Of a DNA stretch of 36,212 bases, positions 1,816 to 33,894 are shown piece by piece; position 1 is the stretch's first letter, and the number at the start of each line of letters is the position of its first letter. The notes beneath the pieces are model-generated. The model was not told the DNA's origin, searched no databases, and saw only the letters and a list, made by a program, of their open reading frames with translations. The stretch is from assembly GCF_001194135.2 (NCBI RefSeq), contig NC_068983.1:151228832-151265043 (forward strand). The letters run 5' to 3'. Position numbers and translations under genes: made by a program. The DNA is from Octopus bimaculoides. Lineage: Eukaryota.

Positions 1816-2208
1816 GTTGTTGTTGTTGTTGGCACTCCGTCGCTTACGACGTCGAGGGTTCCAGTTGATCCGATCAACGGAACATCCTGCTCGTGAAATT
1901 AACGTGCAAGTGGCTGAGCACTCCACAGACACGTCTACTCTTAACGTAGTTCTCGGGGATATTCAGCGTGACACAATGTGACAAGGCTGACCCTTTGAAT
2001 TACAGGCACAACAGAAACAGGAAGAAAGAGTGAGAGAAAATTGTGGTGAAAGAGTACAGCAGGGTTCACCACCATCTCCTGTCGGAGCCTCATGGAGCTT
2101 TAGGTGTTTTCGCTCAATAAACACTCACAACGCCCGGTCTGGGAATCGAAACCGCGATCCTATGACCGCGAGTCTGCTGCCCTAACCATTGGGTCATTGC
2201 GCCTCCAC
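1816..2208 (-). mobile_element. Full-length tRNA-derived SINE, family A (octopus OR-like), with (CAA)n tail and 13-bp TSD
   Basis: The minus strand starts GTGGAGGCGCAATG and has A-box-like TGACCCAATGG and B-box-like GGTTTCGATTCCC. It ends GAGTGCC(AAC)n. The direct repeat AGTGAAGAGAATT lies at 1803-1815 and 2209-2221. About 94% identical by manual alignment to 28588-28975. Confidence 0.92.
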
Positions 2209-2669
2209 AGTGAAGAGAATTAGATTACAACAAACAGTAGCGGTAATAAAAAAAACATGAAAAATACATGCAATTGTTTCTATGATGTTTGCCTATATGA
2301 TGAAACGCTAAAAGTGGCATTAACAAGTGCTATTAAAATCATTTTCTCTTGCAAAGAAAACAAAAATAATCCTGAAATGTCGATAGACTCAAAAATATAT
2401 TGCTTTAAAGAAAACATAAAGGAGCATCCTTGGTTAACTGTGTTTTTTTTTTTTTAATTCTTGCAATTTGGTTTGAAATATTCTTGAAGTGATCTCGATG
2501 TTATATTTTGTTGTATCTCGAAAAGATTATTATTATACTAATAATAATCATGACATTAATGAGATTGATCGCAAATAACGATACATTATTTCGACAAATC
2601 TAGTTGGCTGATTGGTTGAGCAAAGGATTAATCAAACAATTGATTAGTGAATTGATTAAATGATTAGAT

Positions 2670-2690
2670 AACAACAACAACAGCAGCAGC

Positions 2691-2746
<56 letters not shown>
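2670..2746. repeat. (AAC)n microsatellite with a short (CAG)3 interruption
   Basis: Direct reading. It forms the 5' flank of the R4/Dong-like fragment. Confidence 0.95.
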
Positions 2747-2748
<2 letters not shown>

Positions 2749-3243
2749 GACTTGACAGAGCCAAAAATTGGTACGACCACAAACCCGAATGCATTGTCGA
2801 AAATAGAAATGCAAAGATCCTATGGGATTTTATGATTCAGGGCGACCATGAGATTGAGAATAGGAAGCCGGACATAGTTTTAATTGAGAAAGAAAACAGA
2901 CTATGCTGGATCATAGACATAGCATGCCCAGCTGACAACAAGGTATGCGATAATGAAGAAAGAAAAGTCGATAGATATGGCAGGTTAGCATGGGAGGTGA
3001 AGCAGTTGTGGTCGATGAAAAAGGTAGCAGTAGTACCAATAATTGTCGGAGCCCTGGTAACAGTGAGCAAAAATCTCGTGAAGTACGTGGAACAAATAGG
3101 GGCTGCATTGCAGAAAACAGCACGGCTTGGAACCGCTCGAATACTCCGGAAGGTGCTCGAAAAATAAGAAGGGTTACTTTAGTTCACTGGTAGTGAATAG
3201 CTGACGCTGTAGTGCATCCCCAGCGTTAGAAGCTGTGCAAAGG
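2747..3243 (+). mobile_element. 5'-truncated R4-clade (Dong/Rex6-like) non-LTR retrotransposon: C-terminal restriction-like endonuclease (RLE) region plus 3' UTR
   Basis: The frame from 2748 reads GLDRAKNWYDHKPECIVENRNAKILWDFMIQGDHEIENRKPDIVLIEKENRLCWIIDIACPADNKVCDNEERKVDRYGRLAWEVKQLW...GALVTVSKNL...LQKTARLGTARILRKVLEK, with stop at 3167. The WYxHxP, ILWDF, KPDIV, IIDIAxP, K..Y..LA and LGTARILRKVL motifs are typical of R4/Dong RLE domains. Confidence 0.9.
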
Positions 3244-3288: not shown

Positions 3289-4110
3289 GAGTGAGAGCCT
3301 TGCACACAAAGAGTACAAGCGCCGCCACGATAAAGTGTGTATCTACATTGGCTTTTATGTTGTAAATACCAATATGAAGTAACAGAGAACTAGTATAAGC
3401 ATGTACCAAGTGATTACCTCTCCTGTAAAACTATCAGTAAAGATGTCTGTTTTTGTCTTACTCTTACTTCGACGTCTGCTTATTCCATTGTCATTTTTCT
3501 CATATTTCCGTTCTTCCTGATCTCCTTCGGTGTCAAGGCTCAGCTTGATTATGACCGGACCTGCTCTACTGTTCCATAGGAAACCTGCCGGATGCGACAC
3601 CCTCGTAGTGATCATCCACCCTTTAAGAGGTTTTGTTTTTCTTTCTGCAGCGTGTCTAATAAACTTCAAACTTCTTACCAGGCAAGCACTTGGTGCGGCT
3701 GCCGGTTTAGTCGCTGACGGCACAACCATGTAATAGCACAAAAGGTGACCTGACATATTAAAAACTCATATAGTTGGATGGTCACTGACTCTAATGAGTT
3801 CATTCACCTTTTAACAGGTTTTGTTTTTCGTCCATATATATATATATATATATATANNNNNNNNNNNNNNNNNNNNNNNNNNNNNNNNNNNNNNNNNNNN
3901 NNNNNNNNNNNNNNNNNNNNNNNNNNNNNNNNNNNNNNNNNNNNNNNNNNNNNNNNNNNNNNNNNNNNNNNNNNNNNNNNNNNNNNNNNNNNNNNNNNNN
4001 NNNNNNNNNNNNNNNNNNNNNNNNNNNNNNNNNNNNNNNNNNNNNNNNNNNNNNNNNNNNNNNNNNNNNNNNNNNNNNNNNNNNNNNNNNNNNNNNNNNN
4101 NNNNNNNNNN

Positions 4111-4150
<40 letters not shown>

Positions 4151-4245
4151 TCTTTTTCGATTCACCACCCTTTTTCACTGCAGCCGTTGACAGGTTGTGC
4201 GAACCCCCCACTGACACTAGAGAGCAGTCACCATATTTCTTTCCA

Positions 4246-4347
4246 TATCGGCTAACTCTGATGAGCGTAAGGTTATGTAATCAGATTGTTACTTAACACT
4301 CCATTGTATTCCTTGCGCGAAACCAATTGGTAAGATTAGCTGTGATA
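4246..4347 (+). ncRNA. Type I hammerhead ribozyme with canonical core; predicted cleavage after GUA at 4332
   Basis: Helix I 4251-4257 GCTAACT pairs with 4333-4340 AGATTAGC (one bulged A) and extends through TATC 4246-49 / GATA 4344-47. Core CTGATGA 4258-4264. Helix II GCGTAAGG 4265-72 / CCTTGCGC 4311-18 (8 bp, one G-U). GAAA 4319-22. Helix III CC / GG closing the loop AATT. Cleavage triplet GTA 4330-32. Confidence 0.88.
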
Positions 4348-4535
4348 GATATATAGTACTATATATTTCGGATAATACACACGCACACACACACGTACAC
4401 ACGCACACGCACACACACATATATGTATATATATATGCGCATAATTAGGTATACACATTTCGCACACGTAGACGTACTTATAGTGCCGTATAAGTATACA
4501 TAGGCATACACACTTATGCAAACACACAAACACAA

Positions 4536-4583
<48 letters not shown>

Positions 4584-5106
4584 ACCCACACAAACACCCC
4601 CCCACATATATATATATATACACATGCATACTATTACACACACATGCACTTGCACATGTGCCATGTATCAGTGAGTTTGCATGATAAACTATGAAGCACG
4701 CTCAGATAATTATGGTGACAAATTGAATAGAGAGTAAAAGGAGAGAGAAACAAAGTGGGAGAGGGAGAGATGATGTGAGAGAACGTGACAGAATCAAAGG
4801 GTAAAGAGAGTAAGTGACGTGGCAAAAAAAAATATACTCAAATGATATTTAAAACTGAATAAATATACATATACCATCAATATCAAAAACAATATAATGA
4901 CATCTGAAGAAGATAGAGGGGAGGAGAGTAAGTATAGTATATTGCAAAAATACGGAAAAATTAATGGTAAATGTGAGGAATGGAAGAGCCATTGTAGAAG
5001 CAAGTGAGACGATAAAAATTCTCAAAGGAACAGAGGTGTGAGTGATAGAGGAAAAGATACAATGGGAGAATTACAGAATGAAGATGACGTTTGATAGGCG
5101 AATCTC

Positions 5107-5142
<36 letters not shown>

Positions 5143-6105
5143 NNNNNNNNNNNNNNNNNNNNNNNNNNNNNNNNNNNNNNNNNNNNNNNNNNNNNNNNNN
5201 NNNNNNNNNNNNNNNNNNNNNNNNNNNNNNNNNNNNNNNNNNNNNNNNNNNNNNNNNNNNNNNNNNNNNNNNNNNNNNNNNNNNNNNNNNNNNNNNNNNN
5301 NNNNNNNNNNNNNNNNNNNNNNNNNNNNNNNNNNNNNNNNNNNNNNNNNNNNNNNNNNNNNNNNNNNNNNNNNNNNNNNNNNNNNNNNNNNNNNNNNNNN
5401 NNNNNNNNNNNNNNNNNNNNNNNNNNNNNNNNNNNNNNNNNNNNNNNNNNNNNNNNNNNNNNNNNNNNNNNNNNNNNNNNNNNNNNNNNNNNNNNNNNNN
5501 NNNNNNNNNNNNNNNNNNNNNNNNNNNNNNNNNNNNNNNNNNNNNNNNNNNNNNNNNNNNNNNNNNNNNNNNNNNNNNNNNNNNNNNNNNNNNNNNNNNN
5601 NNNNNNNNNNNNNNNNNNNNNNNNNNNNNNNNNNNNNNNNNNNNNNNNNNNNNNNNNNNNNNNNNNNNNNNNNNNNNNNNNNNNNNNNNNNNNNNNNNNN
5701 NNNNNNNNNNNNNNNNNNNNNNNNNNNNNNNNNNNNNNNNNNNNNNNNNNNNNNNNNNNNNNNNNNNNNNNNNNNNNNNNNNNNNNNNNNNNNNNNNNNN
5801 NNNNNNNNNNNNNNNNNNNNNNNNNNNNNNNNNNNNNNNNNNNNNNNNNNNNNNNNNNNNNNNNNNNNNNNNNNNNNNNNNNNNNNNNNNNNNNNNNNNN
5901 NNNNNNNNNNNNNNNNNNNNNNNNNNNNNNNNNNNNNNNNNNNNNNNNNNNNNNNNNNNNNNNNNNNNNNNNNNNNNNNNNNNNNNNNNNNNNNNNNNNN
6001 NNNNNNNNNNNNNNNNNNNNNNNNNNNNNNNNNNNNNNNNNNNNNNNNNNNNNNNNNNNNNNNNNNNNNNNNNNNNNNNNNNNNNNNNNNNNNNNNNNNN
6101 NNNNN

Positions 6106-7619: not shown

Positions 7620-7800
7620 GGCGATAAGTTCGCAGAATCATTAGCATACCAGGTGAAATGCTTAGCAGCATTGTCGTCCGTCCTTACGCTCAGAGTTCAA
7701 ACTCCGCCGAGATCGACTTTGCCTTATATTCTTTCGGAAGCGATAAAATAAGTTCCAATTGAGTACTGAGGTCGATGTAATCAAATCTCTTCCTCCTTGT
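7620..7800 (+). mobile_element. tRNA-derived SINE, family B (diverged)
   Basis: Head GCAGAATCATTAGCA...GAAATGCTTAGC, B-box GAGTTCAAACTCC, central ACTTTGCCTT...GATAAAATAAG, then GGTCGATGTAATC. Homologous to 27563-27742 and 33001-33217. Confidence 0.82.
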
Positions 7801-8587: not shown

Positions 8588-8860
8588 GTACCCCTTTGGT
8601 GGCGACGACGGGTGTTGACCCAATCAACAGAACAGCCTGCTCGTGAGATTAGCGTGAAAGTGGATGAGCACACCACAGACACACACAGCTTTAGCGTAGT
8701 TCTCAGGGAGATTCTATGTGACACGGAATGTGTCAATATTGGTTCTTTTGAATTACGGGTACAACTCATTTTTGCCAGCTAAGTTGACTGGAGCATCGTA
8801 CTGAAGGACACAACGCACCGCCGGATCGTGAGACGAATACCGTAACTACTAAACCGTTAA
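8588..8860 (-). mobile_element. Diverged SINE sharing the family A 3' tail
   Basis: GTTGACCCAATCAACAGAACAGCCTGCTCGTGAGATTAGCGTG...CGTAGTTCTCAGGGAGATTC..TGTGACAC...TTTGAATTAC aligns with 1860-2005. The 5' part differs from family A. Confidence 0.7.
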
Positions 8861-33685: not shown

Positions 33686-33894
33686 ATTTAAAATTTTGGT
33701 ACAAAGCTAGAGGTATCGGGGTAGGGTGTAAGCCGATTACATCGACCGCCAGTTCTCAACTGGTACTTACTTTATCGACCTTGAAAAGTTGAAACGAAAG
33801 TCGACCTCTGCGGAATTTCAACTCAGAAGATAAAGGCCGACGAAATAGCCGCTAAGCATGTTGCTTGGCGTGTAAACAATTTTGTCAGCTCGCC
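33686..33894 (-). mobile_element. Full-length SINE family B (tail 1), diverged
   Basis: AAATTTTGGTACAAAGC...CGATTACATCGACC...AACTGGTACTTACTTTATCGACC...AAGTCGACCTCTGCGGAATTTCAACTCAGAA...GCTAAGCAT...TGTCAGCTCGCC. Confidence 0.87.

What the first reader, a model, noticed from the sequence alone, without database searches (positions are those of the whole stretch)
4246..4347. Complete canonical type I hammerhead ribozyme with a palindromic, dimer-competent helix III
Seen: every catalytic-core nucleotide is present in correct topology: CUGAUGA, G10.1-C11.1, GAAA, A15.1-U16.1 and a GUA cleavage triplet. Helix II is 8 bp with a 38-nt loop. Helix I is 7 bp plus a bulged extension (TATC/GATA), like the helix I bulge that docks loop II in natural type I hammerheads. 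Helix III is only 3 bp, and ACCAATTGGT (4322-4331) is a perfect 10-nt palindrome. Established: short-helix-III type I hammerheads of Penelope-like elements and metazoan retrozymes cleave as dimers through such palindromes. Inference: this is a potentially active self-cleaving RNA. If the region is intronic on the + strand, it could cut the host pre-mRNA co-transcriptionally. The unusually long loop II may define a distinct family.
Basis: partly seen in the sequence, partly recalled or inferred. Interest (0 to 1): 0.9.

Follow-up and report, generated by a model that had tools for sequence, protein, structure and literature searches.

The report
Solitary hammerhead ribozyme motif, unverified
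The sequence really does contain a complete hammerhead self-cleaving RNA motif that chance is unlikely to produce, but it is a single copy with no detectable relatives and some structural flaws, so it is most likely an ordinary leftover of a ribozyme-carrying mobile element.

Summary
At 4249-4342 (+) there is a type I hammerhead with every core nucleotide: CUGAUGA, G10.1-C11.1, GAAA, A15.1-U16.1 and a GUA site. Helix II is 8 bp with a 38-nt loop. Helix III is 3 bp inside the perfect palindrome ACCAATTGGT.

Under a Markov null, stems this long arise about 0.2-0.8 times per 2.7-Gb genome. Adding G10.1-C11.1 and a palindromic helix III lowers that to about 1e-3. I therefore read it as a hammerhead by descent.

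Four points weaken it:
A shifted register that pairs C3 and U4 is 1.7 kcal/mol more stable.
- No Rfam family matches, and a covariance model built from four validated animal hammerheads does not find it.
- There is no second copy in the window, no reverse transcriptase or GIY-YIG endonuclease, and no homologue in any searchable collection. Covariation could not be tested.
- Nothing shows that the site lies in an intron.

Best reading: a lone copy left by a Penelope-like element or retrozyme, sitting in a 199-bp segment between TA tracts. It is dimer-competent in silico but probably a weak cleaver. This is a new member of a known kind, of modest interest.

The parts
4148..4346 (+). Unique 199-bp segment (44% G+C, window 36%) that carries the motif at its 3' end. 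Possibly a retroposed unit.
   Evidence: It is bounded by (TA)18.5 at 4111-4147 and by the TA-rich tract that starts at 4347. No other copy exists in the window.
4249..4257 (+). Helix I, 5' strand (positions 2.9-2.1).
   Evidence: It pairs with 4333-4342, with A4335 bulged.
4258..4264 (+). Core CUGAUGA (C3-A9).
4265..4272 (+). Helix II, 5' strand, starting with G10.1.
4273..4310 (+). 38-nt 'loop II'. It is predicted to extend helix II as an imperfect hairpin.
   Evidence: Minimum-free-energy folds all keep this hairpin.
4311..4318 (+). Helix II, 3' strand, ending with C11.1.
4319..4322 (+). Core GAAA (G12, A13, A14, A15.1).
4322..4331 (+). Helix III and loop: the perfect palindrome ACCAATTGGT, giving 3 bp plus loop AAUU. 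It forms a 10-bp intermolecular helix when two copies are cofolded.
4332..4332 (+). A17 of the GUA triplet. The predicted cleavage is between 4332 and 4333.
   Evidence: A GUA site is used by the validated axolotl Ax353 hammerhead.
4333..4342 (+). Helix I, 3' strand, with A4335 bulged.
4111..4147 (.). (TA)18.5 microsatellite on the left flank. It continues across the N gap (3857-4110) to (TA)n at 3834-3856.
4347..4366 (.). Degenerate TA tract on the right flank, followed by (CA)n.

Best explanation
This is a genuine type I hammerhead motif that descends from a functional ribozyme. It survives here as a solitary copy at the 3' end of a 199-bp unique segment lying between TA tracts.

The most likely source is a ribozyme-carrying retroelement: either the hammerhead-bearing terminal part of a 5'-truncated Penelope-like element, or a lone monomer of a non-LTR retrozyme.

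If the + strand is transcribed, the RNA could fold into the three-way junction and cut itself after A4332, leaving a 2',3'-cyclic phosphate and a 5'-OH. It could do this as a monomer (3-bp helix III), or by pairing its palindromic helix III with an identical copy.

Shown: the motif, its rarity under a random model, and its ability to dimerise in silico.

Inferred: descent from a mobile element, and any activity. I expect activity to be weak. There are no recognisable loop-loop contacts, helix I has a bulge near the core, and a competing register hides C3 and U4. No host function is implied.

My sub-estimates are: hammerhead by descent about 0.8, retroelement origin about 0.55, measurable self-cleavage in vitro about 0.4.
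For: - Complete consensus in the right topology, and the only hit in the window.
- Chance expectation is about 0.2-0.8 per 2.7-Gb genome for stems this long. It falls to about 1e-3 when G10.1-C11.1 and a palindromic helix III are also required. Cervera and de la Pena list these two features as hallmarks that were not part of their search descriptors (PMC4209133).
- C15.2-G16.2 fits the GAAAY/RUH core.
- Helix III has the same plan as the validated coral retrozyme hammerhead (ACAGTACTGT), and a GUA site occurs in the validated axolotl hammerhead.
[quoted passage not shown] Most of those occur as single motifs from truncated elements.
- Penelope-like elements are heavily 5'-truncated and favour microsatellite targets such as (TA)n. 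The segment is flanked by TA tracts.
- Lone retrozyme monomers are common and dispersed.
- The isolated 111-nt RNA folds into a three-way junction with z = -2.45.
- Cofolding two copies gives the domain-swapped dimer.
Against: - No Rfam family reaches its gathering score, and no hammerhead family is listed even at E <= 10.
- A covariance model built from four validated animal hammerheads does not align the candidate.
- The hammerhead register of helix I is 1.7 kcal/mol worse than a shifted one that pairs C3 and U4. The hammerhead helices hold only 1-4% of the predicted ensemble.
- With more flank included, helix I is lost from the minimum-free-energy fold and z = 0.
- There is no second copy, tandem repeat, reverse transcriptase or GIY-YIG endonuclease in the window.
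- No homologue was found anywhere, so there is no covariation evidence.
- TA tracts occur about every 620 bp in this window, so the flanks are weak evidence.
- The long TA run on the left, and a weak collinear similarity to a SINE copy in the same orientation, would fit an element whose sense strand is the minus strand.
- Consensus matches are expected by chance in large databases (PMC3088659).
Confidence: 0.55

Rival explanations
1. A chance match. Ordinary non-functional DNA happens to satisfy the short hammerhead consensus, and it was picked out because many windows were read with a flexible eye.
For: - The motif is simple, and chance matches are expected in large data sets (PMC3088659).
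- Loose matches arise about 0.17 times per Mb of strand.
- There are no homologues, and neither Rfam nor my own model finds it.
- Unusual features: a 38-nt loop II, a bulge at position 1.3, and a competing register.
- The fold is not more stable than shuffles once flanks are included.
Against: - Stems of 9, 8 and 3 bp were never seen in 480 Mb of simulated strand.
- The expected number per 2.7-Gb genome is below 1, and about 1e-3 with G10.1-C11.1 and a palindromic helix III.
- Real hammerheads number thousands per genome in many animals. Prior odds therefore favour a real one.
Confidence: 0.17
2. The 199-bp segment is a decayed SINE-like retroposon whose sense strand is the minus strand, with its TA tail on the left. 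The hammerhead-like motif then lies on its antisense strand and runs into flanking DNA, so it is fortuitous.
For: - The first 16 nt after (TA)n, GGCTCTTTTTCGATTC, resemble the end of the SINE copies at 12976 and 15864, GGCTTCTTTCAGATTC.
- Global alignment of 4148-4319 with 15864-16016 gives z = 2.5-3.0. Only 2-5 of 500 shuffles reach that score.
- The alignment ranks among the top 5 of 4018 window segments.
- That SINE copy also occupies 199 nt between TA runs.
Against: - Local alignment is not significant: 64 of 300 shuffles score as well. BLASTN finds nothing.
- I chose the comparison after noticing the resemblance by eye.
- The aligned SINE positions do not supply the 8-bp helix II, the core or the palindrome. 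SINE ancestry would therefore not make the motif any more likely by chance.
Confidence: 0.1
3. A host-recruited hammerhead inside an intron or untranslated region that cuts the host transcript co-transcriptionally.
For: - Conserved intronic hammerheads exist in amniotes (my own knowledge; human and mammalian examples are also mentioned in PMC3088659).
- The motif is complete.
Against: - No gene or exon was recognised in the window.
- The surroundings are microsatellites, assembly gaps and repeat copies.
- In Xenopus, retrozyme-type hammerheads are depleted from introns relative to intergenic DNA.
- The predicted fold is weak in context.
Confidence: 0.04

Closest known systems
Minimal or atypical type I hammerheads of Penelope-like elements (Cervera and de la Pena 2014, PMC4209133)
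   Same: - Long helix II (7-8 bp there, 8 bp here).
- Conserved G10.1-C11.1.
- Palindromic helix III and loop 3 that allow dimers.
- No loop 1-loop 2 contacts.
- Mostly found as single motifs from truncated elements.
- The elements favour microsatellite targets.
   Different: - Helix I is long here (9 bp with a bulge) rather than 4-5 bp.
- There is no unpaired base between A9 and 10.1.
- Loop II is 38 nt.
- There is no pLTR, reverse transcriptase or GIY-YIG endonuclease nearby.
Canonical type I hammerheads of animal non-LTR retrozymes (coral Amil224, mussel Mg353, axolotl Ax353 and Ax330; PMC7229834)
   Same: - Same core.
- GAAAC...GUH, with a GUA site as in Ax353.
- Helix III of 3 bp plus a palindromic tetraloop inside a 10-nt palindrome, exactly as in coral Amil224.
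- Host segment of about 200 bp with low G+C.
   Different: - Helices I and II are 6 and 4 bp there, with conserved loop contacts.
- Those hammerheads sit in tandem repeats of 170-400 bp.
- A covariance model built from these four sequences does not detect the candidate, and there is no tandem copy here.
Rfam Hammerhead_1 (RF00163) and the other Rfam hammerhead families
   Same: Same consensus core and three-helix junction.
   Different: No match at the gathering score, nor at E <= 10. The likely causes are the 38-nt loop II and the helix I bulge.

Membership tests
Hammerhead ribozyme (general consensus, type I topology) | Core nucleotides C3 U4 G5 A6 N7 G8 A9 and G12 A13 A14. | tested here: met
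   CUGAUGA at 4258-4264 and GAA at 4319-4321.
Hammerhead ribozyme (general consensus, type I topology) | An A15.1-U16.1 pair, a non-G base at position 17, and a G10.1-C11.1 pair. | tested here: met
   A4322-U4331, A4332, and G4265-C4318.
Hammerhead ribozyme (general consensus, type I topology) | Three helices around the core, with helix I open and helices II and III closed. | tested here: met
   The descriptor hit has stems of 9, 8 and 3 bp. A three-way junction is the minimum-free-energy fold of the 111-nt RNA. However, the exact hammerhead register holds only 1-4% of the ensemble.
Hammerhead ribozyme (general consensus, type I topology) | Site-specific, Mg2+-dependent self-cleavage. | not testable with these tools
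   This needs in vitro transcription.
Hammerhead ribozyme (general consensus, type I topology) | Covariation in the helices among homologues. | tested here: inconclusive
   No homologue was found in the window, in viral, metagenome or prokaryote contigs, or in the protein collection. The source genome is not in any searchable collection.
Rfam hammerhead families | A covariance-model score at or above the gathering threshold. | tested here: not met
   No match in the window at gathering score. No hammerhead family is listed at E <= 10 for 4150-4450.
Canonical animal type I hammerhead / non-LTR retrozyme | Helix I of about 6 bp and helix II of about 4 bp, with conserved loop 1-loop 2 contacts. 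| tested here: not met
   The stems are 9 and 8 bp, and loop II is 38 nt. The model built from four validated members does not align the candidate.
Canonical animal type I hammerhead / non-LTR retrozyme | Head-to-tail tandem repeats of about 150-450 bp. | tested here: not met
   No second copy and no tandem array apart from microsatellites. A 254-nt N gap lies 38 nt upstream of the unit, so a neighbouring copy cannot be fully excluded.
Canonical animal type I hammerhead / non-LTR retrozyme | A short helix III capped by a palindromic loop. | tested here: met
   ACCAATTGGT here, against ACAGTACTGT in coral Amil224.
Hammerheads of Penelope-like elements | A long helix II (7-8 bp), a G10.1-C11.1 pair, and palindromic 15.2-16.2 and loop 3. 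| tested here: met
Hammerheads of Penelope-like elements | An unpaired nucleotide between A9 and 10.1, and a short helix I (4-5 bp). | tested here: not met
   G10.1 follows A9 directly, and helix I is 9 bp with a bulge. My minimal-hammerhead descriptor gives no hit in the window.
Hammerheads of Penelope-like elements | A location in a pseudo-LTR next to a reverse transcriptase / GIY-YIG endonuclease ORF. | tested here: not met
   No RVT or GIY-YIG hit among 113 window ORFs. Solitary motifs from truncated elements are the commonest state in the literature, so this does not exclude descent from such an element.

The most novel reading that the evidence does not exclude
The copy is one member of an undescribed, possibly abundant hammerhead family in this invertebrate genome. 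From memory, the SINE copies in the window look cephalopod. In this family helix II would be extended into a hairpin of about 54 nt. The internal loop after its eighth base pair, rather than a terminal loop 2, would contact the distal end of the 9-bp helix I. Current Rfam models would miss such a family, and it could mark a new retrozyme or circular-RNA lineage.
Probability: 0.1. Interest if true: 0.5.

Novelty: new member of a known kind. Interest (0 to 1): 0.3.

Why it matters
If the motif is real and repeated in the genome, it would add a hammerhead-bearing retroelement, and possibly small circular RNAs, to a lineage where none is described in the papers I could search. It would also show that covariance-model screens miss hammerheads with long helix II insertions.

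As a single relic copy it has no evident consequence for the host. Animal genomes commonly hold thousands of such motifs.

Tried and rejected
- **Rfam.** I scanned the whole window at gathering score and the locus at E <= 10. No hammerhead family appeared; only microsatellite-driven miRNA-like noise did.
- **Own covariance model.** I built it from four validated retrozyme hammerheads. It does not detect the candidate.
- **Search for copies.**
  - BLASTN within the window found none.
  - Pattern scans of viral, metagenome and prokaryote contigs all returned 0.
  - A protein-space search with the 49-aa read-through peptide found nothing.
- **Attempt to reach the source genome.**
  - Exact ORF look-ups found nothing on record.
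  - Relatives of the transposon ORF at 2664-3164 are only 48-78% identical, on ENA contigs.
  - The two loci I fetched are about 74% identical in DNA, share none of the window's SINEs, and hold no hammerhead.
- **tRNA-like origin.** ARAGORN found nothing.
- **Penelope-like element remnants.** There is no RVT or GIY-YIG among 113 ORFs, and no minimal hammerhead elsewhere in the window.
- **SINE homology of the unit.** The local alignment is not significant and the global one is borderline. I kept this as a rival rather than adopting it.
- **TA flanks as proof of microsatellite targeting.** I downgraded this, because TA tracts occur about every 620 bp in this window.
- **Identifying the organism from the literature.** A full-text search for a SINE sequence string gave no hit. 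The cephalopod assignment rests on memory only.

Full report
**What is there.** The window is a gap-rich, microsatellite-rich draft assembly of a eukaryote, with 11 N runs and 36% G+C. Reading 4100-4500 and scanning both strands with my own hammerhead descriptor gives exactly one hit, on the + strand.
- Helix I pairs 4249-4257 with 4333-4342. It has 2 bp, then a bulged A4335, then 7 bp including G4250.U4341.
- The core is CUGAUGA at 4258-4264 and GAAA at 4319-4322.
- Helix II is 8 bp (4265-4272 with 4311-4318) and opens with G10.1-C11.1. It encloses 38 nt (4273-4310).
- Helix III is A4322-U4331, C4323-G4330 and C4324-G4329, with loop AAUU. It lies inside the perfect palindrome ACCAATTGGT.
- A4332 is position 17 (GUA).

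Helix I is interrupted by a one-base bulge two pairs from the core. The TATC/GATA 'extension' is only one of several competing pairings.

**Is it more than chance?** I used a first-order Markov model of the window.
- In 480 Mb of simulated single strand there were 83 loose matches (stems of at least 5/4/2 bp), and none with stems of at least 9/8/3 bp.
- A factorised estimate uses four terms: 235 CUGANGA seeds per Mb of strand; 1.6e-4 for an 8-bp helix II followed by GAAA; 0.64 for any helix III; and 6e-3 or 1.3e-3 for a helix I of at least 7 or 9 bp.
- That gives about 0.2-0.8 such motifs per 2.7-Gb genome.
- Requiring G10.1-C11.1 and a palindromic helix III as well gives about 1e-3 per genome. 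Cervera and de la Pena single out these two features as emerging in real hammerheads without being part of their search descriptors (PMC4209133).
- Hammerhead-bearing animal genomes carry thousands of real motifs.

The odds therefore favour a hammerhead by descent. This holds even after allowing for post-hoc choice of features, and for the general warning that consensus matches arise by chance in large databases (PMC3088659).

**What weakens it.**
- No Rfam family matches the window at gathering score. At E <= 10 on 4150-4450 no hammerhead family is listed.
- I took four experimentally validated animal hammerheads from the supplement of PMC7229834 (coral Amil224, mussel Mg353, axolotl Ax353 and Ax330). 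I aligned them and built a covariance model. The model does not align the candidate, either across the whole window or on the locus alone. The candidate is therefore not a canonical member: the 38-nt loop II, the helix I bulge and the long stems place it outside those models.
- Thermodynamically, the isolated 111-nt RNA folds into a three-way junction (z = -2.45). In that minimum-free-energy fold, however, U4257, C4258 and U4259 pair with A4335, G4334 and A4333. This hides C3 and U4.
- The true hammerhead register is 1.7 kcal/mol less stable and holds only 1-4% of the ensemble.
- With more flank included, helix I is replaced by a local hairpin and the fold is no better than shuffles.
- Nearest-neighbour models ignore the tertiary structure of the core, so this is a caution and not a refutation.

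**Dimer claim.** Cofolding two copies gives a domain-swapped dimer with a 10-bp helix III and intermolecular helices I, at -62.4 kcal/mol against 2 x -25.6. The palindrome is therefore dimer-competent. Dimerisation is not required, though. The coral retrozyme hammerhead has the same plan (ACAGTACTGT, 3 bp plus tetraloop) and cleaves efficiently as a monomer. Only one copy exists at this locus, so a dimer would need a transcript from elsewhere.

**Context.**
- The motif ends a 199-bp unique segment (4148-4346, 44% G+C). On the left is (TA)18.5, which continues across a 254-nt N gap to more (TA)n. On the right is a degenerate TA tract and then (CA)n.
- There is no second copy or tandem array and no other hammerhead or minimal hammerhead.
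- No reverse transcriptase or GIY-YIG endonuclease appears among 113 ORFs, and no recognisable gene.
- Penelope-like elements carry hammerheads in their terminal repeats, are usually 5'-truncated, favour microsatellite targets, and leave mostly solitary motifs with a long helix II.
- Animal retrozymes are now thought to derive from these elements, and lone retrozyme monomers are dispersed through genomes.

This is the best-fitting origin, but the flank evidence is weak. TA tracts occur about every 620 bp in this window, and a SINE copy (15864-16016) also sits in a 199-nt stretch between TA runs.

**A rival lead.** The first 16 nt of the segment resemble the end of the window's SINE copies. Global alignment of 4148-4319 to the SINE copy at 15864-16016 is borderline significant (z = 2.5-3). 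Local alignment and BLASTN are not significant. If this is real, the element's sense strand would be the minus strand and the hammerhead would be antisense and partly in flanking DNA. The aligned SINE positions do not supply helix II, the core or the palindrome, so this would not explain the motif. I keep it as a minor rival.

**Search for relatives.**
- Pattern scans of viral, metagenome and prokaryote contigs found nothing.
- A protein-space search with the peptide read through the unit found nothing.
- The source genome is not in the searchable collections: exact ORF look-ups failed.
- The best relatives of a neighbouring transposon ORF are 48-78% identical on ENA contigs. The two loci I fetched lack the window's SINEs and hold no hammerhead.

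**Verdict.** The most likely reading is a solitary hammerhead relic of a ribozyme-bearing retroelement, possibly still able to cleave weakly. It is a new member of a known kind and of modest interest. An intronic or host role, and 'a distinct family', are unsupported at present.

Noticed in passing
window 15864-16016 and 12976-13028: Two copies (one partial) of a tRNA-derived-looking SINE in reverse orientation, each abutting TA or CA microsatellites. From memory it resembles the abundant octopus SINE. A literature search for the sequence string found nothing.
   Followed up: partly
window 33036-33344, 32851-33075, 33723-33872, 27569-27705(-), 25954-26112, 7634-7782(-), 11627-11737, 20686-20747(-): A dispersed repeat of about 150-230 bp, with at least 8 copies at 78-87% identity. 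It is the commonest interspersed repeat in the window.
   Followed up: partly
window 1820-2212 and 28584-28976: A 393-bp pair of inverted copies, 94% identical and 26 kb apart, with a third diverged fragment at 8614-8765. This is probably another repeat family.
   Followed up: partly
window 2664-3164 (+): An open frame encoding the C-terminal part of a retroelement protein (KPDIV...IIDIACP...VVPIIVGALV). It has no Pfam family. Relatives at 48-78% identity lie on long ENA contigs, and the two loci I fetched (L001, L002) also carry RVT_1 genes.
   Followed up: partly
window 27100-27369 (+): An ORF tail (…YCSQLWSPH…LETIQRSYTKKI…ISYWEKLKKIKLFFLGRRRERYAMIY…) that, from memory, looks like the C-terminal region of a CR1/L2-type LINE reverse transcriptase. 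Pfam gives no hit.
   Followed up: no
window, all 11 N runs (e.g. 3857-4110, 5143-6105, 30465-30934): Most of the assembly gaps I could inspect are bordered by microsatellites (TA, TC, CA, or ATC-type trinucleotide runs). This suggests that the gaps are unresolved simple repeats.
   Followed up: no
window 4578-4605: A C-rich patch, ACACCCACCCACACAAACACCCCCCC, inside the (CA)n tract 230 nt downstream of the motif. It superficially resembles the (ACACCC)n stretches described next to hammerheads in endonuclease-deficient Penelope-like elements. It is probably only microsatellite decay.
   Followed up: no
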